A stretch of DNA of 63,614 bases, counting the filler, from Hyphochytrium catenoides (Eukaryota; Protista; Hyphochytriomycota), in the NCBI GenBank assembly GCA_900088475.1. It is 13 parts of 13 records of this genome, joined end to end, with 100 filler letters (N's around TTAATTAATTAA, not from the genome) between each part and the next. Parts side by side here need not be neighbours in the genome. Positions count along the whole stretch, not along the records: positions 52,754 to 55,141 come from FLMG01002956.1; 12 more parts are not named here. One strand, written 5' to 3'. The notes below the pieces were generated by a model, which saw only the letters and a program-made list of their open reading frames with translations, was not told the origin of the DNA and searched no databases. Position 1 is the stretch's first letter. The number at the start of each line of letters is the position of its first letter. Shown in pieces: positions 1,991 through 55,356 of the stretch. The translations under genes were made by a program, and so were the position numbers.

Positions 1991-2294
1991 CGTATGGCAC
2001 CCTAATAATTGACCCAAGATGACTCTTAAGTTTATCCGAGGTTTATAGCGCCTGGCCGAATATACCGGAAGGTGAGCATCGATGAGACAGAGCTCGAGAC
2101 AGAGGGAACTGAGCAAGTGTCTATATAAAGGGAGGACAAGGGAGAGAAACGAAGAGATACAGATATCTGAAGTCAAGGCGTGGAAGTAAAATGACCTTTG
2201 ATTGGCCATCAAAGAGAGAGAGAAAGAGAGAGAGGTAGAGCTAGAGAGAGAGAGAGAAAGAGAGGTAGAGCTAGAAAGAGAGAGAGAATAAGAA

Positions 2295-2341
<47 letters not shown>

Positions 2342-2381
2342 GAGGTAGAGCTAGAGAGAGAGAGAGAAAGAGAGAGAGAGA

Positions 2382-2429
<48 letters not shown>

Positions 2430-2441
2430 AAGAGAAAGAGA

Positions 2442-2481
<40 letters not shown>

Positions 2482-3390
2482 CAGTGGAGAGAGAAAGCAA
2501 AAGAATGGGAGAGAGAGAACAGAAAGCGGAGAACCCGGAGAGAGAAAGCGAGCGAGCGAGGCAGAAAGGTACTGGTGAGAGGTGAGGAGAAAGCAGGAAA
2601 GAGTAACGCAATGACACCATCAACAGCAGGAGGGAGGGCTCTCTGTTGGCTGATGCGCTGCTAGGAGAAGACGTGGCGTGGCGACAGCGGATAACGCCGC
2701 TGTCCTCAGCATTCTTTCTCAGTTCTTCCCCTTCCTCCTCATCCTCGCCACATTATCAGCTCCACGAGAGAGAGAGGGATAGCTCTCCTCCTGCTTGCGG
2801 AGCACTAGGAAGTGAAGAACTCTCCCCTCCGCGTCAACTGGTTTCTTGCCTCTTCTTTCGCCTTCTCTCTTTCTCTTTCCTCTTCTGTTTCTCACATGCA
2901 CAGGGGGACCCACGCGGCCGGTGCAGGGCCCAGTCTACTTCCTGAGTAGATGATGCGGGTCTTGCAGAAAGCGGCTCCTCGGCTTGAAGGACAAGAGAGA
3001 GAGTGTGAGTCTGTGAGAGAGAGAAAGAGAAAAGAGAGAGACGGCGCCCGTGCAGAAGAAGCTTCGTCTTTTGTCTTTAGATCTGCTGGGCCGATATAAG
3101 CATTAAGCAACGCTATATTCTGTCTCTTGGTTGTCACATGCTATCACCTACAGGTTCTCTTTTAGAGTCTCTCTCTTCTCCACCCACTCTTTGTTCTCTT
3201 CTTTCTCTCCCTCTCTCTTTTCTCCTCTCCCTCTTTCTGTGTCTCTCTCCCTCTTTCAGTCGCACACTCCCTTGCGTTCCGCTCTCCCGCCTTCTCTCTC
3301 TCTCTCTCCTCTCTGGGTCCCGCTGTCCTCTTTAGCATAACGCTTCGCTCTCTCTCCTTGCCGTCCCCCGCACTCTACACTGTCTTCTCT

Positions 3391-3618
3391 TTATGCTTTT
3401 GCTTTATCTTTTCCTCTCTTCATCTGCTTCGCGAACTTTGCAAAGCGCTGCCCTTGCTCCTTTGCCAGCTCGAGCTCCAGGTCCGAGGGCTGGCGGCTGC
3501 CGTCTCCGCCTGCCAAAGTGCCCGCGCCATAGGCGCTGCCGCCGTGCACTTCTTCAAGGCTCCGTTGCAATGGAGAAGGGTAGCCGAGAGGGACGAATAC
3601 TATTCCGTGGTGGGTGAG
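3391..3618 (-). CDS. wrbA: WrbA-family quinone oxidoreductase, copy 2, last exon only (not in the ORF track)
   Basis: After a TAG acceptor the frame reads LTHHGIVFVPLGYPSPLQRSLEEVHGGSAYGAGTLAGGDGSRQPSDLELELAKEQGQRFAKFAKQMKRGKDKAKA*. The intron position before LTHHG matches copy 1. Confidence 0.93.
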   Translation of the reverse strand, partial: LTHHGIVFVPLGYPSPLQRSLEEVHGGSAYGAGTLAGGDGSRQPSDLELELAKEQGQRFAKFAKQMKRGKDKAKA

Positions 3619-3780
3619 CTAGCGCGATGAGAAGAAGAAGAAGAAGAGGAAGAGAGAGAGCGAAACGGCAGAGAGAGAGAGAGAGACGGCAGAGAGAGAG
3701 AGAGTTACGGCAGAGAGAGAGAGAGAGACGGCAGAGAGAGAGAGAGTTACGGCAGAGAGAGAGAGAAAGAGAGAGAGAGA

Positions 3781-4906: not shown

Positions 4907-6024
4907 TCACTGGTCAGGGTCAGTAGAGTCAGCGCTGATGTTCATGTCCAGCTCTGAGTCGAAGATGCGTCGGTAGAGGTCCAGAACATCGTTCGCAGCG
5001 GTCTCAAAGTGACTGAGAAAGAGAGAGAACGGAAGAGGTGGCAGTGGATTGAGACAATGCGTTAGCGTTTGGGGCAAGCTGGAGATATCGTGAAAGCGCG
5101 CTCAGGGGGATAAGAGAGAACTAAAAGCAATGATGAAGGCGACGAAGAGAGAGAGAGACAGAGAGGTGGGACGATATGATACCTGGTAGCGTCATAGGAC
5201 TTGCTGATGTAGCAGTTGTCAATCTTTCCGCTGTCCACCGGCTCATACGTGTCCTCTACCGAGTCAAACCTGAAAGCACCGCATAAGCCACGTCAGCCAG
5301 AGCCCATCAGTTAAATGAAGAAGGAGCGTCTCGATAAAAAGGGGATAGGGAAAAGTGTAAGGGAGAGAGAAAGCGGGAACAAGGGAACAAATCGCAATGA
5401 GAGCAGAACAGTGCTCTCCGGTCTGGGTGTATGCGAAGAAGAGAAAGGGGCAAGAGAACGCTAACAGAATCACAAAGCACTCATTATCACATCGAAGTAC
5501 CAATGCGGATAAGCAAAGCATGCAGCAGAACGCACCTCTCTAGCACTGGCCCAAGGAGGTTGATGCCGCTCTGGACTTCAGCAATAGGGTCACCCGTCTC
5601 CACCTGCAAGAGAGAACAAGGAAAGAGAAAATGGAGTTACGAGGTGACAATGGTCGATTAGACATATCCTAGGCGGGTGATCCAAAGAAATGAACGACTG
5701 TGTGGAGTTCGCAAGACAGAGCGGGCGAGAGAGGGGGAGAAGGGAGAGTCCTCTTGGTAAGGTGTGGGCGACGCAGAAGAGACAACGTCCAAAGCCCACG
5801 ACCATAAATATTCCCATTAGAGAAACGCGTATATAAAATCCACATAAGAAGGGAGGAGGACGAGGAAGAGAAAGACAGAAGGAGAGAGAGTGAGAAACAG
5901 AGAGAAAGAGAGACTTTGAAAGAGAGACAAGACAGCCCGTCTCCTACCGTGGTGCTGACAATTGCGATCCACACGTTCTTCGGTGCGACTTGATGTGCAT
6001 AGGACACAGAGGCTACGTAGACAT
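4907..6024 (-). CDS. GDI1: Rab GDP dissociation inhibitor, last four exons
   Basis: Exons 6024-5948, 5603-5536, 5269-5183 and 5012-4907 join in phase: VYVASVSYAHQVAPKNVWIAIVSTT|VETGDPIAEVQSGINLLGPVLER|FDSVEDTYEPVDSGKIDNCYISKSYDATS|HFETAANDVLDLYRRIFDSELDM...*. SYDATSHFE is the Rab-GDI C-terminal signature. Confidence 0.94.
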
Positions 6025-6329
6025 CTAAAACGTATCAAGGCAGCGGGACAAGAGGGAGGCAACGGCGTCAACAAAGACTTTTGAACTGATATGTAAAGAC
6101 AAAGAGCTCCACAACCGACTACTCTTGGAGGNNNNNNNNNNNNNNNNNNNNNNNNNNNNNNNNNNNNNNNNNNNNTTAATTAATTAANNNNNNNNNNNNN
6201 NNNNNNNNNNNNNNNNNNNNNNNNNNNNNNNGTTGGTTCTATGTACAAATGAAGCGTATTCTTCCTTCAGCAGTTGGAGCCGGCTCTTGCTGTGCATGAT
6301 TGAGCGCCATGTTGATGATAGTCTCAGCG

Positions 6330-9300
6330 CCACGCCCTCTTCTTCTTCTCCTTCGTCTTCTATCATTATTGCCGAGGAGGATGTTTACAAATGATTCTTC
6401 TTCCTTTTCCGAGGATGATGGTGGAGGAGGAGAGTGTGTTGAATAAGGAAGAGTCCAGGACTTTGTAGCTGTTGTCTCTTCTTCAACTTCTTTCTTCTTC
6501 TCGTCTACCTCTTCTTCTGTCCCTTCTTGTTCTTGTCCTTGTTCTTCTTTACTTCTTATTATAATCATTATTGCCGAGGATGTTCACAAATGATTCTTCT
6601 TCCTTTTCCGAGGATGATGGTGGAGGAGGAGAGTCTGTTGAATAAAGAAGAGTCCAGGACTTTGTAGCTGTTGGCTCTTCTTCAATTTCTTCTTCTTCTC
6701 GTCTCCTTCTTCTTCTGTCCCTTCTTCTTCTTGTCCTTGTTCTTCTTCTTTACTTTCTTATTAGTTATAAAGACTCGCTACAATGTATATAAAGCCTTCC
6801 TTCTAAGGAAGACGAAAGTCACTAGGTCAACAATGAGAAAAAAAAAGATTAAGAGGAAGAATGCTGCACAAAGAAACAACAAGGGTAGAAAGAGTGCTGT
6901 CCTTGGGCGCCATCGCGTCTTTTTCTTAGTTCTACTTTGACGCTGTGATAACCCTGATCATAAGGGAACTCTGATGGGACGTGAAGAGGGAGGAACAGTA
7001 GGGTGGTCATCACGTTCCTAGTTTACTACGGCGGCGCTGCTTACTTGCATTTTGTAGGTCAAGCATTCCTTTCTTTCCATTTTCGTTTATCATCATAACG
7101 AGCCTACTACGAGGAGGACATTGGGCAGCAGCTCTTCCTCATCCACAGCCACCGTCCAATGCCCCATACGTAAAAAGCGAGGTCGGGCCTCTGATGATGA
7201 TCGTCAACAACCTGCTGCCTGCTGCAGGAGAGTTGACAGCCTCTGTGCATATTTACATCTCCCTTTCCCACAGGACAACATATATAGCAGACTAACTGGG
7301 CGGCCAGAGCGTCAAACACATGCTTGAAGACTCCTCAACTCATTCTGACGCCGCGGGAATGGACAAAAAATGGACCAGGGGACCGGTCAGCCTCCTCTAT
7401 CATTATATGGCTTAAGATCCCATAGTGGAGTATGGCTACATGTTTGCTCTCCTGTACAGTTGTATGGTTAAGCTGCCCGAGAGGATGATTATTAGAAGGA
7501 GTATATAGCGAGCTGCAAGCTTGGCGGGCGGAGGGGTCCTTGTGATTTGTCTGTTTATCGTCCGTTCTTTCTATGCTGTTCTTGGTCTAATAATGCGTGA
7601 GGACCAAGAACCAACATGGTTGGGCTCTTCTCAGACCCGAGTGCATGACCAGAAGCGGAGCTCCGGAGTCATGATGGCCTGTAACTCCGACGGGCAATCC
7701 TTGCCATACAATCTTCAAACAAAATGAAGTTGTGACGTGCTACTACCGCCGAGACGTTCTGTGTGACAGCAGAATGACACACCACACCCTGACTCTATCA
7801 TTTTAATAAGCAGAAGTTTGGACAGAAGTAGAAGGAGAAACGAGTAGCACCATCGACAGAATGACAAATATTGGACCAGACGCACACAGCCACTCAGCTC
7901 GTCAAGGCTCAAACCTTCAACCCTTTGGCCCCTCCTCTTCTCCTCCTCCGTCTTCTATCGTTATTATTGCCGACGAAGAGTTCAACAATGATTCTTCTTC
8001 TTCCTTTTCTGAGGATGATGGTGGAGGAGGAGGAAAACGTGGTGAAGCAGAATCCAGGACTTTGTAGCTCGGGTCTCTTCTTCATTTTCTTCTCCTTCTT
8101 CTTCTCCTACTCCTCCTTCTTCTCTTTCTTCTCCTCCTTCTTCCTCTCCTCCTCCTTCTTCTTCTTCTCCTCCCTCTTCTTCTTCTGCTGTCCCTTCTTT
8201 ATCTGTTACTGTTTCTTCCTTCTTCTTTCTTCGTAGAATAACGATTAGGTCTTTCTTCATAGAATAATAACGATTAGGTCTTTCTTCTTTAAAGAGACTA
8301 CGAGGAGGAGCGAAGTTGGCAGCTCTTTCCTCTTCACCTAGAGCCTCCGTCGTCCCCATTCCCATCAGACAAACAAGAAGGAAGGGGGGGGTTCAGATCC
8401 TCCTCTGCTGCATAAAGAAGGAGGAGGATCGTCCGAGGCAGCAGCCTGCTGGAAGAGTAAATTCGGAGAGTCTGAGAGTTTCTTCTCTGCTCTCTTTCGT
8501 GAGCTCCTCTGTTTGTTGCCGTTCAGCTCTTACTTTAGGATCCAGAGTCTGTGATAAATCATAACTCCTCATTAGTCTCGGCGGATCATGTGAAAATGTG
8601 GAATATTAGGGAGGATGGGCCGATATCTAGGCTGGAATCGAGGACAACCTCGGTCGGCATGTCCATAATATTCGGCCCCGACCCAACAAACGGGACTCCG
8701 CATGCTACCTCCTCACAACTTTCGGTCTCTAGGAGCTATTATGACCGGTGACGATGGTTCATGGTCCTGCATACTGAAAACAGAAAGTTAAAGGAGCAGT
8801 TAGTTTCGTATTTTGGGATAGCTTTCCTTGTCGTTTTCATTGCCTATCTACCACTGCTCAAAAGGACGGAAGACGAACGCCAAGAAAAAGAAAAGGACAA
8901 GAGGATACCGAATTGAAGAGAAGAAGACAAACAAAAGAGAAAAGAAAGAAGACGAGGAAGAGAAGAAGGAAAAGAATGGAATGGAGAAGGGGAAGACGAA
9001 GAGAAGAAGAACAAGCATAAGGACAGAAAAAAGGAGGAGGAGAAAAGGAGGACAAAGAAAAGAAAAAAAGAAGAAAGAAAAAGAGGAGGAAGACGAAGAG
9101 AAGACGAACAAGTAAAAGGAAAGAATGAGAAGAGAAGAAAAGGAGGACGAAGAAAAGAAGAAAAAAAAAGAAAGAAGAGGAATTGGAAGACGGAGAGAAA
9201 AAGAACAAGCATAAGGAAAGAAAAAAGAAGAAGAAGAAAAGGAGGACAAAGAAAAGAAAGAAGAAAGAAAAAGCGGAGGAAGACGAAGAGAAGAAGAACA

Positions 9301-52753: not shown

Positions 52754-52786
<33 letters not shown>

Positions 52787-52860
52787 CATCCTCTGTCTGT
52801 CTCGCTTTCTTCCATTATCATTAATAAGACTTGTCCCTTGGGTTCTCCCGCTTTCCTTAG

Positions 52861-52968
52861 GCAAATACGGAGGGCTTGCATCTCGAAAAGGTCGGGGTGG
52901 CAACTGACGCACATGGCCTTATCGCTGTTAACAGCAACTATCAGACTGAAAAGACTCATATGTAAGCG

Positions 52969-53015
<47 letters not shown>

Positions 53016-54837
53016 GTCGTCCCTTCTCTCCCTCTCTCCCTCCCTGGGTTGAAATGTTTGGTTTGTCACTTTCTTTCAAACTCTCTACCCAAGAGGACAA
53101 CAGAGCTGTGGAAGAGAAAGAAGAGACTGAGCACATTGAAATGAGAGAGACTGGGGAATGGTGTGTTGTGGGACTTTACCTTGAGAATGTATGCAAAAGC
53201 TTGATACGCAAGCGCCAGAGCTTTGGTTGCGATAGAAAACAATTTATCTAGAAGAGATGAGGGATCAGCTGCGGATAAGAAAGTACCCCAGTCCTGACTC
53301 GTGTCTTCCTCTCTCCGCAGTTATGCGGGCGGCGATTGTATCGGCTTCCCAGCTCTGGCTTCTACTTCTAACGAGCAGGGTCGCTTAGCTTCTATCCACA
53401 TGTGGGAGGGCATAGAACCGGTGAGAGAAGGCGATAGCCCGATAACAGATGGGAGAAAGACAGAGAGACAGATCAATTACCAAAGGATAGACATAGAGTC
53501 ATTAACAACGAGAGGTAAAAGAGAGAGAAGGGGAGAATGAGCGAGAGAAACAATTCAAAGAGTGACCTTTTGCCGGCGTTTACCCTCTCTTCCATTCCGC
53601 AGCGAGCGGTCCGCGACAGTCAGTTGGTCCTAAATAACTTTCCGTACGGCGTGTACACGGTGCCTGAGATGTCGATGGTGGGGAGGACAGAGGAAGAACT
53701 CACCAAGATGAACATCCGATACGAGGTAGGCCGACTAATCCTTTCGCAGTGTTTCCTCTCTCTCTCTCCAGGAGCTCATTTCTCTGATAATGGGGACTGA
53801 TAACCTCTACGATGTTTCTTCAATCTTCTCGGGAGAAACTGTCCCTTCCATTCCGTGTCCTCTGTCTGCTGTTTTCCTATTCTTTTCTACCTCATCCTCA
53901 CGCTTTACCTCTCTTTGTCATGCTCTCTCTCTTCACGGTTCCTATTGTCACTCATTATGTGTGTGTGTGTCTCTCTCTCTGGTGCAGGTGGGCACTGCAA
54001 ACTTCAATGAGCTAGCGAAGGCACAGATGCTTGGGGGGAACGCGGGGTTGCTTAAGCTCATCTTTGACCCCAAGACATTAGAGGTACGACCCAATTATCA
54101 CTAAGATGAGAAAGAGACAGCATAGCTCGCAACCATTGCTCGACCTTGTGGTGACGGGGTAAAGAGATAAAGGAAGACGGCCTACGCTTTCACTATCTCT
54201 CTCTCTCTCTCTCTTTGTCTCTCTCTTTCTCTCTCCATATCCTTTTCCCAATTCGGGTTGCAGTCCGCTCTCTCACTCACTCTCTCTATACGATCCACAT
54301 CCTCTCTCCACAGCCAGTCTCTATTTTGTTCCCCTCGGGTTTTCGTCAATCTTTCTCTGGCTAATATTCCCGTCAATTAGCTCTACGGCGTTCATGTTGT
54401 CGGAGAGGGTGCGACCGAGATTGTTCACATTGGCCAGGCGGCCATTGCAATGAAGACAACCATAGAATTCTTCAGAGATGCAGTCTTCAACTATCCCACA
54501 CTGGCAGAGGTCTCTCTCTCTCTCTCTCGCCCTCATCTCTTGTGACCGCAATTCCCTACTGCTCTGTTACGTCCCTCTTCTTTCTTTAGCGGCCTTACTA
54601 AATCGTCTCCGTCGCCTTGGCTTGCTCAGCGCTCGACACCTGTTTGGTTTTCTCTTTTAGCTGGACCGTGACGCCCGCCAATTTATGAACTTAATCCCTT
54701 CTTCCCTCTCTCTCGCGCGCGGTATGTTGTCTTTTCCTATATCTTCGCCCTCACCCATTTTATTTTGTCTCTCTTCTGATGCTCAGGCATACCGCGTAGC
54801 TGCCTTGGATGGGCTAGGCAAAGTGAGGAGGTCCTAA
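52861..54837 (+). CDS. sthA: Soluble pyridine nucleotide transhydrogenase (SthA/UdhA family), last six exons
   Basis: Exons 52861-52961, 53321-53420, 53603-53725, 53988-54083, 54381-54509 and 54787-54837 give ANTEGLHLEKVGVATDAHGLIAVNSNYQTEKTHI|YAGGDCIGFPALASTSNEQGRLA...|FPYGVYTVPEMSMVGRTEEELT..YE|VGTANFNELAKAQMLG..LLKLIFD|LYGVHVVGEGATEIVHIGQA...DAVFNYPTLAE|AYRVAALDGL..*. FNYPT.AEAYRVAAL.GL is the STH C-terminus; lipoamide dehydrogenase and glutathione reductase have HPT..E there. Confidence 0.9.
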
Positions 54838-55356
54838 GAAGAAGAAAGAGACACCCTTCATCACAAGATAGACATCCAACTTCTTCTGTGTGTCTCTCTC
54901 TTTGTTCCACGAAGTCCAAGTCATTCTTCTCGACAACGCTCCCTCGTTTCCAATACATTTACTCGATGTCCGGGGCACAAGGTTTCCATTGTTTGCGCCC
55001 ATATTTGACGTATATTTATAAGGCTCACCCCGCGCCTATAATCATGAGCACGCCAATAGCCCGTCACACTTTGTTCCTACATCCTGCTCTTCGCCATATC
55101 GCCAGTCTCATGCCCTAGCTCCCCTGGCCTCCGCTAATCTANNNNNNNNNNNNNNNNNNNNNNNNNNNNNNNNNNNNNNNNNNNNTTAATTAATTAANNN
55201 NNNNNNNNNNNNNNNNNNNNNNNNNNNNNNNNNNNNNNNNNGTAATGCCAAGAGTAAAGATATGGAATCAAAGCGAATGGCAGCGGCCGAAGGCTCTAAG
55301 TAGACGAAGGTAGCTTGTCAGCATCTCCACTCAGACAGAGGTGGCGCCAGACTTAC

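What the first reader, a model, noticed from the sequence alone, without database searches (positions are those of the whole stretch)
52861..54837. Bacterial-type soluble transhydrogenase (SthA/UdhA) as an intron-rich eukaryotic gene
Seen: six phase-consistent exons (five GT-AG introns with this genome's CT/GA microsatellites) encode the STH C-terminal half, ending FNYPTLAEAYRVAALDGL. Established: soluble transhydrogenase is characterised in bacteria, where it transfers hydride from NADPH to NAD+; studied eukaryotes use the unrelated membrane-bound NNT or lack the activity. Inference: this is an old, fully domesticated bacteria-to-protist transfer that gives an energy-independent NADPH overflow valve. 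The introns rule out bacterial contamination.
Basis: partly seen in the sequence, partly recalled or inferred. Interest (0 to 1): 0.75.

Follow-up and report, generated by a model that had tools for sequence, protein, structure and literature searches.

The report
Soluble transhydrogenase gene in a protist
This is the intron-interrupted 3' half of a real eukaryotic gene for an SthA-type soluble NAD(P) transhydrogenase, but it is one more member of a family already annotated in several eukaryotic lineages, not a new bacteria-to-protist transfer.

Summary
Window 52861-54837 (+) carries six phase-consistent exons separated by five GT-AG introns with CT/GA microsatellites. They encode 199 residues and end at a TAA stop. 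Each of the five exons long enough to scan scores best against NCBIfam NF003585 (Si-specific NAD(P)+ transhydrogenase), in colinear order, and all six score far better against E. coli SthA than against Lpd or Gor. The Lpd/GR catalytic His is Tyr (FNYPTLAE), as in solved SthA. All four exonic variants in the source organism's DNA runs are synonymous, so the gene looks functional. The introns exclude bacterial contamination.

SthA homologues are annotated in every oomycete genus listed (two paralogues, shown for several genera), brown algae, Chrysoparadoxa, Nannochloropsis, three holozoan protists and Rhodelphis. In my trees they form one clade (SH-aLRT 99), and the window exons side with that clade.

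Eukaryotic homologues carry mitochondrial-presequence-like N-termini, but this gene's 5' half lies off the contig. Two points remain of interest: no paper found in the searched library describes a eukaryotic SthA experimentally, and a 2025 preprint still calls SthA bacteria-only. Activity, location and expression were not tested here.

The parts
52754..52860 (+). 3' end of the upstream intron. It holds a (CT)15 microsatellite at the contig edge, a pyrimidine tract and the acceptor AG at 52859-52860. The 5' half of the gene lies beyond the piece.
   Evidence: An in-frame TAG at 52858-52860 stops any upstream extension of E1. Logan contigs break at this repeat.
52861..52961 (+). Exon 1 (33 codons plus 2 nt), ANTEGLHLEKVGVATDAHGLIAVNSNYQTEKTH(I). 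It covers the end of the NAD(P)-binding domain and the lead-in to the FAD 'GD' motif.
   Evidence: NF003585 positions 273-305, E 6e-6. E. coli SthA residues 274-305, 36.6 bits, against Gor 20.8 and Lpd 13.9.
52962..53320 (+). Intron 1, 359 nt, GTAAGC..CCGCAG, phase 2, with a long CT microsatellite.
53321..53420 (+). Exon 2 (1 nt plus 33 codons), YAGGDCIGFPALASTSNEQGRLASIHMWEGIEP. It contains the second FAD-binding (GD) motif.
   Evidence: NF003585 positions 307-335, E 9e-9. 85% identical to Pythium insidiosum P0038 over 27 aa.
53421..53602 (+). Intron 2, 182 nt, GTGAGA..CCGCAG, purine-rich. Two haplotype contigs cover it in all three DNA runs.
53603..53725 (+). Exon 3 (41 codons), the linker plus the start of the dimerisation domain (FPYGVYTVPEMSMVGRTEEEL...). 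An alternative in-frame acceptor lies at 53622-53623.
   Evidence: NF003585 positions 338-373, E 2e-10. Pyr_redox_dim positions 2-28. The variant at 53683 is synonymous.
53726..53987 (+). Intron 3, 262 nt, GTAGGC..GTGCAG, 69% pyrimidine.
53988..54083 (+). Exon 4 (32 codons), VGTANFNELAKAQMLGGNAGLLKLIFDPKTLE.
   Evidence: NF003585 positions 374-405, E 9e-6. Pyr_redox_dim positions 31-59. The variant at 54048 is synonymous.
54084..54380 (+). Intron 4, 297 nt, GTACGA..AATTAG, with a TC microsatellite at 54196-54235.
54381..54509 (+). Exon 5 (43 codons), LYGVHVVGEGATEIVHIGQAAIAMKTTIEFFRDAVFNYPTLAE. Tyr stands where Lpd and GR have the catalytic His.
   Evidence: NF003585 positions 407-448, E 7e-17. 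Pfam Pyr_redox_dim E 4e-9. The best PDB hit is 9n4y, a soluble pyridine nucleotide transhydrogenase; the alignment shows FNYPT against Lpd F(G/S)HPT. The variants at 54470 and 54500 are synonymous.
54510..54786 (+). Intron 5, 277 nt, GTCTCT..GCTCAG, 73% pyrimidine, with a TC repeat at its 5' end.
54787..54837 (+). Exon 6 coding part (16 codons plus TAA), AYRVAALDGLGKVRRS*.
   Evidence: Matches E. coli SthA residues 453-465 and P0038 residues 492-504.
54838..55141 (+). 3' untranslated or downstream sequence to the end of the piece. No further feature was recognised.
   Evidence: No Rfam match. Only short ORFs without support.

Best explanation
The piece holds the last six exons (199 codons, about 43% of the protein) of a nuclear, intron-rich eukaryotic gene. 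It encodes a flavoprotein of the SthA/UdhA family: soluble, energy-independent, Si-specific NAD(P)+ transhydrogenase, EC 1.6.1.1.

Shown by the sequence: the second FAD-binding GD motif (YAGGDCIG), the complete C-terminal dimerisation domain, and Tyr in place of the His of the His-Glu dyad that disulfide reductases need.

Inferred from E. coli and Azotobacter SthA: an FAD-containing oligomer that passes a hydride between NADPH and NAD+ through the flavin without coupling to a proton gradient, so it equilibrates the two pools (NADPH to NADH when NADPH is in excess).

The gene belongs to a clade of eukaryotic SthA homologues that is already in the databases (oomycetes, ochrophyte algae, ichthyosporeans, Corallochytrium, Rhodelphis). 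This fits one old acquisition followed by descent, intron gain and loss in many lineages. It does not fit a transfer peculiar to this organism. Most of these homologues carry N-terminal extensions that look like mitochondrial presequences, so a mitochondrial site of action is the best guess here too. This gene's own N-terminus is not in the piece.
For: - **Family:** each of the five scanned exons has NF003585 as its best NCBIfam hit, colinear over profile positions 273-448 and summing to about 185 bits. The next best families (MerA, Lpd, GR) trail by 5-40 bits per exon.
- **E. coli comparison:** SthA beats Lpd and Gor on all six exons, about 223 bits in total.
- **Pfam and PDB:** Pyr_redox_dim hits E3-E5. 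The best PDB match is the SthA entry 9n4y, and the alignment shows His replaced by Tyr.
- **Eukaryotic gene:** five GT-AG introns with consistent phases.
- **Functional gene:** there are no in-frame stops. All 4 exonic variants among 26 in the DNA runs are synonymous, with p about 0.003 under neutrality.
- **Eukaryotic clade:** named homologues appear. All 27 eukaryotic-clade rows (most named, some unnamed metagenomic) form one clade with SH-aLRT 99 when rooted on Lpd/Gor. In the unrooted tree the 24 sampled bacterial sequences lie on one side of a branch with support 99.
- **Window exons in that clade:** added one at a time, they show the eukaryotic state at 3 of 5 diagnostic columns, including a W and a G never seen in the bacterial set. 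Every exon has positive log-odds, +54 bits in total. The best-scoring group is oomycete paralogue B, about 63% identity.
- **Presequence-like extensions:** homologues carry 22-78 extra N-terminal residues rich in R, S, A and L.
- **Expression in a eukaryote:** the Nannochloropsis homologue was detected in a proteome (PMC7554720).
Against: - The N-terminal 57% is missing. That includes the Rossmann motifs, the single-Cys GGxCxxxGT signature and any targeting peptide.
- No RNA run was found, so the splice junctions and expression are unconfirmed.
- No paper found in the searched library reports an assay of a eukaryotic SthA, so the activity is extrapolated from bacteria.
- The window gene is only about 60-63% identical to eukaryotic homologues and about 56-60% to the nearest bacterial ones. 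Its clade membership rests on column states, not on a tree that contains it.
- The trees used a quick search, a bacterial sample biased towards the nearest relatives, and very long outgroup branches (warns of this).
- Intron positions are not shared with Ectocarpus, so introns give no positive evidence for common descent.
Confidence: 0.85

Rival explanations
1. One reading: an independent, lineage-specific transfer of sthA from a bacterium into this protist, later colonised by introns, and unrelated to the SthA genes of other eukaryotes.
For: The window exons are nearly as similar to the Acidobacteriota-like bacterial SthA (up to 120 of 198 identities) as to eukaryotic ones (up to 126 of 198). 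At one diagnostic column the window has the bacterial state. No intron position is shared with Ectocarpus.
Against: Every exon has positive log-odds for the eukaryotic clade, +54 bits in total, and the window has W and G states that were absent from all 23 sampled bacteria. The eukaryotic homologues themselves form one clade, so one origin is enough to explain them.
Confidence: 0.08
2. A true member of the SthA family by descent whose role in eukaryotes is not NADPH/NAD+ transhydrogenation. It could be, for example, a mitochondrial NAD(P)H dehydrogenase or diaphorase acting on another acceptor.
For: The searched literature holds no assay of any eukaryotic member. Oomycetes keep two paralogues only about 55-58% identical, which hints at divergent roles. 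Flavoprotein oxidoreductases of this fold often change acceptor.
Against: The match to the equivalog model is strong, and the SthA-specific motifs are kept in the window (FNYPTLAE) and in the homologues (GGVCVHTGT(I/V)PSK). Homologues are 55-59% identical to bacterial SthA over the full length.
Confidence: 0.1
3. A decaying or unexpressed pseudogene copy.
For: There is no RNA evidence. Only part of the gene is visible. The contig is short and bounded by microsatellites.
Against: All six exons are open with consistent phases and canonical splice sites. The conserved motifs are intact. All 4 exonic polymorphisms are synonymous, while 22 variants lie in introns or the UTR.
Confidence: 0.04
4. Bacterial contamination, or a different disulfide oxidoreductase (Lpd, GR or MerA) mistaken for SthA.
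For: The fold family is shared, and weak hits to Lpd, MerA and GR models exist for most exons.
Against: Five introns interrupt the frame. SthA is the top hit for every exon by wide margins. The catalytic His is replaced by Tyr.
Confidence: 0.01

Closest known systems
E. coli SthA/UdhA (b3962) and Azotobacter vinelandii SthA (PDB 9n4y)
   Same: The C-terminal architecture is the same: GD motif, dimerisation domain and FNYPT(M/L)AEAYRVAAL tail. Tyr replaces the Lpd/GR catalytic His. About 50% of aligned positions are identical to E. coli SthA across the six exons.
   Different: The window gene is nuclear and has at least five spliceosomal-type introns. The linker between HMW and FPYG is 7 residues longer than in the nearest bacterial sequence (P0260). 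The N-terminal half was not seen. Filament or oligomer formation and activity are unknown.
Eukaryotic 'NAD(P)(+) transhydrogenase (Si-specific)' proteins, e.g. oomycete paralogue B (Pythium insidiosum P0202, Pythium oligandrum P0198), paralogue A (P0038), Ectocarpus P0193, Chromosphaera P0183, Rhodelphis P0217
   Same: They belong to the same family, and the window shows the eukaryotic clade's column states. Identity is 60-63% over the 198 compared residues. The FNYPTLAE motif is identical.
   Different: The window gene is not close to any sampled lineage; the best match is 126 of 198 identities. It is much more intron-rich than the intronless homologue examined (P0230 on L002). Its intron positions differ from those of Ectocarpus.
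Membrane-bound proton-translocating transhydrogenase (NNT/PntAB)
   Same: It catalyses the same overall hydride exchange between the NAD and NADP pools. It is the enzyme usually credited with this job in eukaryotic mitochondria.
   Different: It is an unrelated fold, membrane-integral, coupled to the proton gradient and not a flavoprotein. I did not test whether this genome also has NNT, because only this piece was available.
Dihydrolipoamide dehydrogenase and glutathione reductase (E. coli Lpd, Gor)
   Same: They share the two-dinucleotide-binding-domain flavoprotein fold and the Pyr_redox_dim domain.
   Different: Every exon scores far lower against them. They have the HPT(x)xE catalytic His, where the window has Tyr.

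Membership tests
SthA/UdhA, Si-specific NAD(P)+ transhydrogenase (NCBIfam NF003585, EC 1.6.1.1) | Whole-protein score above the equivalog cut-off (465 bits) | tested here: inconclusive
Only profile positions 273-464 are present in the piece. The exon-wise scores (25.1, 34.5, 39.7, 24.6 and 61.3 bits) sum to about 185 bits for 43% of the model.
SthA/UdhA, Si-specific NAD(P)+ transhydrogenase (NCBIfam NF003585, EC 1.6.1.1) | Best match within the pyridine nucleotide-disulfide oxidoreductase superfamily is SthA, in colinear order | tested here: met
   NF003585 is the top hit for all five scanned exons. E. coli SthA scores above Lpd and Gor for all six exons. The best PDB hit is SthA 9n4y.
SthA/UdhA, Si-specific NAD(P)+ transhydrogenase (NCBIfam NF003585, EC 1.6.1.1) | Catalytic His of the C-terminal HPTxxE motif replaced by Tyr (FNYPTxAE) | tested here: met
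   The window has FNYPTLAE. Solved SthA has FNYPTMAE. Lpd chains have FGHPTFSE or FSHPTLSE.
SthA/UdhA, Si-specific NAD(P)+ transhydrogenase (NCBIfam NF003585, EC 1.6.1.1) | Redox-active CxxxxC disulfide reduced to a single Cys (GGxCxxxGT(I/V)PSK) | not testable with these tools
   That region lies in the missing 5' half of the gene. All 22 homologues checked have the single-Cys form.
SthA/UdhA, Si-specific NAD(P)+ transhydrogenase (NCBIfam NF003585, EC 1.6.1.1) | Second FAD-binding GD motif and C-terminal dimerisation domain | tested here: met
   YAGGDCIG in E2 aligns to YAAGDC(V/I)G of the homologues. Pyr_redox_dim covers E3-E5, with E 4e-9 for E5.
SthA/UdhA, Si-specific NAD(P)+ transhydrogenase (NCBIfam NF003585, EC 1.6.1.1) | FAD-dependent NADPH:NAD+ (thio-NAD+) transhydrogenase activity | not testable with these tools
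   This needs an enzyme assay. No paper found in the searched library reports an assay of a eukaryotic member.
Eukaryotic SthA clade (oomycetes, ochrophytes, Holozoa protists, Rhodelphis) | Groups with the eukaryotic sequences rather than with the nearest bacterial ones | tested here: inconclusive
   Exon-by-exon column analysis favours the clade: 3 of 5 diagnostic columns and +54 bits, with every exon positive. No tree containing the window gene was built, because the joined peptide was left out.
Dihydrolipoamide dehydrogenase / glutathione reductase / MerA | C-terminal His-Glu catalytic dyad (HPTxxE) | tested here: not met
   Tyr stands at the His position. The models for these families score 5-40 bits lower per exon.

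The most novel reading that the evidence does not exclude
Contrary to the current literature statement that SthA occurs only in certain bacteria, eukaryotes hold an old, single-origin, probably mitochondrion-targeted clade of soluble transhydrogenases. It spans stramenopiles, holozoan protists, Rhodelphis and this intron-rich protist. In these organisms it provides an energy-independent NADPH/NADH exchange alongside or instead of NNT. The window gene would be a new, deeply diverged member, and no member has yet been studied experimentally.
Probability: 0.55. Interest if true: 0.45.

Novelty: new member of a known kind. Interest (0 to 1): 0.3.

Why it matters
For this genome the result is an ordinary annotation: a partial SthA-family gene that is correctly recognised and probably functional. 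The wider point is modest but real. Reviews and a 2025 structural preprint (10.1101/2025.02.04.636493) still describe soluble transhydrogenase as confined to some bacteria. Sequence databases, however, already hold a coherent eukaryotic clade with mitochondrial-type leaders, and in the searched literature none of these proteins has been assayed or localised. If they are active transhydrogenases in mitochondria, models of NADPH supply in oomycete pathogens, brown algae, oleaginous algae such as Nannochloropsis and early-branching holozoans would need an extra uncoupled route between the NADH and NADPH pools. This window adds another lineage but does not open that question by itself.

Tried and rejected
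- **Recovering the 5' half or the organism:** exact look-up of two window ORFs among called genes found nothing. The run search returned only coded DNA runs of one study and no RNA. The Logan contigs are 100-900 nt and break at the microsatellites, so they do not extend the gene.
- **Finding this organism's own protein:** the best match of any fetched protein or fragment over whole tblastn matches is about 71% identity (up to 74% within exon 5 alone), so it is not in what I retrieved.
- **Shared intron positions with Ectocarpus as a test of common descent:** the positions differ. The possible exception in the variable linker cannot be aligned reliably. The Ectocarpus model also looks imperfect there. 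The test gave nothing either way.
- **Contaminant or Lpd/GR/MerA reading:** rejected.
- **Rfam scan of the piece:** no match.
- **Literature on eukaryotic SthA:** five targeted searches returned no study of it. One search was badly framed and gave only noise.
- **Costly representative search:** I used it once, with exon 5.
- **Joined peptide:** I never built or searched the joined 199-aa peptide. In one search the coding nucleotides were strung together inside a script only to count length (600 nt) and GC (52.8%). They were not translated, saved or sent anywhere.
Full report
**What is in the sequence**

The piece 52754-55141 starts inside an intron. It opens with a (CT)15 repeat at the contig edge, followed by a pyrimidine tract and an AG at 52859-52860, with an in-frame TAG just before the first coding base.

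Six coding segments follow on the + strand:

| Exon | Coordinates |
|---|---|
| E1 | 52861-52961 |
| E2 | 53321-53420 |
| E3 | 53603-53725 |
| E4 | 53988-54083 |
| E5 | 54381-54509 |
| E6 | 54787-54837, ending in TAA |

The five introns are 359, 182, 262, 297 and 277 nt, and all begin GT and end AG. Intron 1 splits a codon after its second base; the other four lie between codons. Several introns carry CT/TC microsatellites and are 64-73% pyrimidine on the coding strand, while intron 2 is purine-rich.

The only ambiguity I see is a second in-frame AG 21 nt into E3 (53622-53623). Using it would shorten the variable linker to the length seen in the nearest bacterial sequence (P0260). The first AG directly follows the pyrimidine tract and is the more likely acceptor. 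No RNA data exist to decide.

**Family assignment**

- **NCBIfam:** the top hit of each of the five exons long enough to scan is NF003585, Si-specific NAD(P)+ transhydrogenase. The matches are strictly colinear (profile positions 273-305, 307-335, 338-373, 374-405, 407-448 of 464), with E-values from 6e-6 to 7e-17. MerA, Lpd and GR models trail far behind.
- **Pfam:** Pyr_redox_dim lies on E3-E5.
- **E. coli K-12 proteins** fetched from the annotated genome: SthA wins on all six exons, with about 223 bits in total. On E5, for example, SthA scores 51 bits against 27 for Gor and 17 for Lpd.
- **PDB:** the best chain for E5 is 9n4y, a soluble pyridine nucleotide transhydrogenase. The printed alignments show that lipoamide dehydrogenases have the catalytic His (FGHPTFSE, FSHPTLSE) where the window and the solved SthA have Tyr (FNYPTLAE, FNYPTMAE).

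So the peptide does not group with Lpd or GR.

**Is it a live eukaryotic gene?**

Five introns that interrupt an otherwise continuous match exclude a bacterial contaminant.

Three DNA runs of the same coded organism (two samples, one study) hold the piece as short contigs that break at the microsatellites. Against the window they show 26 single-base differences. Only four lie in exons, and all four are synonymous (GGG>GGA, TTG>CTG, TTC>TTT, ACA>ACG). With 23% of possible coding changes being synonymous, four out of four has p of about 0.003 under neutrality. That supports purifying selection. No RNA run was found, so expression and the junctions remain unconfirmed.

**Is it unusual for a eukaryote?**

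A full-library search with E5 gave Pythium and Phytophthora proteins of about 520 aa as its best named full-length hits. Two word searches seeded with the Pythium protein and with a Chromosphaera protein gave many named eukaryotic homologues:

- Every oomycete genus listed: Pythium, Globisporangium, Phytophthora, Peronospora, Hyaloperonospora, Bremia, Plasmopara, Peronosclerospora, Lagenidium, Saprolegnia and Aphanomyces. Two paralogue groups are present, shown for several of these genera, and many proteins are named 'NAD(P)(+) transhydrogenase (Si-specific)' or 'soluble pyridine nucleotide transhydrogenase'.
- Brown algae: Ectocarpus, Ascophyllum and Undaria.
- Chrysoparadoxa.
- The ichthyosporeans Chromosphaera perkinsii and Amoebidium parasiticum.
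- Corallochytrium limacisporum.
- Rhodelphis marinus.

The identifier prefixes Nk52_ and Clim_ were checked in PMC6981761. A Nannochloropsis gaditana protein of this name was detected in a proteome (PMC7554720). The Ectocarpus gene spans 5.8 kb with many introns.

All homologues checked have the SthA single-Cys motif GGVC(V/I/L)(H/N)TGT(I/V)PSK, and all but one have FNYPT(L/M/F)AE.

**Phylogeny**

A 60-sequence tree puts the 24 sampled bacterial sequences on one side of a branch with SH-aLRT 99. These are the nearest ones found, and the named members are Acidobacteriota.

A 47-sequence tree rooted on E. coli Lpd and Gor shows this order:

1. E. coli SthA branches first.
2. The Acidobacteriota-like bacteria come next.
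3. All 27 eukaryotic-clade rows form one clade with SH-aLRT 99.
4. An unnamed metagenomic group with long S/P/Q-rich leaders is its sister.

Caveats: the search was quick, the bacterial sample is biased, and the outgroup branches are very long.

I did not put the window gene in a tree, because that needs the joined peptide. Instead each exon was added on its own to the reference alignment. At the five columns that separate the eukaryotic clade from the bacteria, the window has the eukaryotic state at three, including a Trp and a Gly never seen in the bacterial set. It has the bacterial state at one and neither state at one. The log-odds of the window's residues under eukaryotic versus bacterial column frequencies are positive for every exon and sum to +54 bits.

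By identity the closest group is oomycete paralogue B, at about 63%. No sampled lineage is close, so the organism remains unidentified and the gene is a deep branch.

**What this does to the interpretation**

The gene is real and correctly named. The idea of a remarkable transfer peculiar to this protist is not supported.

The family is spread over at least three major eukaryotic groups, is monophyletic as far as I could test, and is already labelled in UniProt and NCBI. An old bacterial origin of the whole eukaryotic clade remains plausible, with Acidobacteriota-like sequences nearest among those sampled. It is a property of the clade, not of this gene.

Intron positions are not shared with Ectocarpus. 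This fits lineage-specific intron gain and says nothing decisive about descent.

**Mechanism**

Shown: the FAD GD motif, the dimerisation domain and loss of the disulfide-reductase His.

Inferred from bacterial SthA (Sauer et al. 2004, as cited, and the A. vinelandii filament structure): an FAD-mediated, uncoupled hydride exchange between NADPH and NAD+.

Most eukaryotic homologues have 22-78 extra N-terminal residues rich in Arg, Ser, Ala and Leu with few acidic residues, for example MLSALYRRRSLGSSAARLF in Aphanomyces and MLTKLTRRPNLRSLATRH in Saprolegnia. By eye these look like mitochondrial presequences; no predictor was run. A mitochondrial matrix enzyme is therefore my best guess for the clade, at about 60%. 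For this gene the N-terminus is off the contig.

**Novelty and interest**

This is a new member of a known kind. What keeps it above the floor is a gap between databases and literature. [quoted passage not shown] That gap concerns the whole clade and can be addressed better in tractable organisms than from this 2.4-kb fragment.

**Left out**

Structure prediction was not attempted, because a half-protein of a well-known fold would add nothing.

Noticed in passing
window 53408-53547 (intron 2): All three DNA runs hold two alternative contigs over this stretch. One is identical to the window; the other has 6 substitutions and a 1-nt insertion. This suggests two alleles (a heterozygous diploid) or two strains in the cultures.
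   Followed up: partly
window 52754-52791, 52963-53049, 53948-53986, about 54180-54248: Logan contigs of every run end at the CT/GA or GT microsatellites. These repeats fragment the assembly, which is probably why the window piece itself stops at a (CT)15 run in the middle of the gene.
   Followed up: partly
window 53603-53623: A second in-frame AG lies 21 nt inside exon 3. Using it would remove RAVRDSQ and give a linker of the same length as in the nearest bacterial sequence (P0260). It is a possible alternative or true acceptor.
   Followed up: no
L001 (Ectocarpus siliculosus FN649751.1) 6884-7537: The deposited Ectocarpus model (P0193, 612 aa) seems to skip about 11 conserved residues (xYEVGxAxFxE) and carries a roughly 100-aa insert after the HMW motif. 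A bacterial or Pythium protein aligned to the DNA runs into a stop at the exon edge. The gene model may be imperfect there.
   Followed up: partly
P0038-type and P0202-type proteins: Oomycetes keep two SthA paralogues (A and B, about 55-58% identical). Each forms a clade with support 100 and both have presequence-like N-termini. In the tree, paralogue A groups with the ochrophyte algal sequences and B does not.
   Followed up: partly
L006 (ENA contig NODE_1062, 30 kb) 6001-8073; proteins P0255, P0285, P0307, P0325, P0136: An unnamed metagenomic group of SthA homologues is sister to the named eukaryotic clade. Some have roughly 200-aa S/P/Q-rich N-terminal extensions, and the gene on L006 is intronless. 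They are probably eukaryotic (fungus-like?), but the organism is unknown.
   Followed up: partly
L002 (ENA contig_107, 1.59 Mb) 2001-3650: An intronless SthA homologue (P0230, 549 aa) sits next to a tubulin-tyrosine-ligase family gene on a 1.6-Mb contig of an unnamed organism. It groups weakly with oomycete paralogue B.
   Followed up: no
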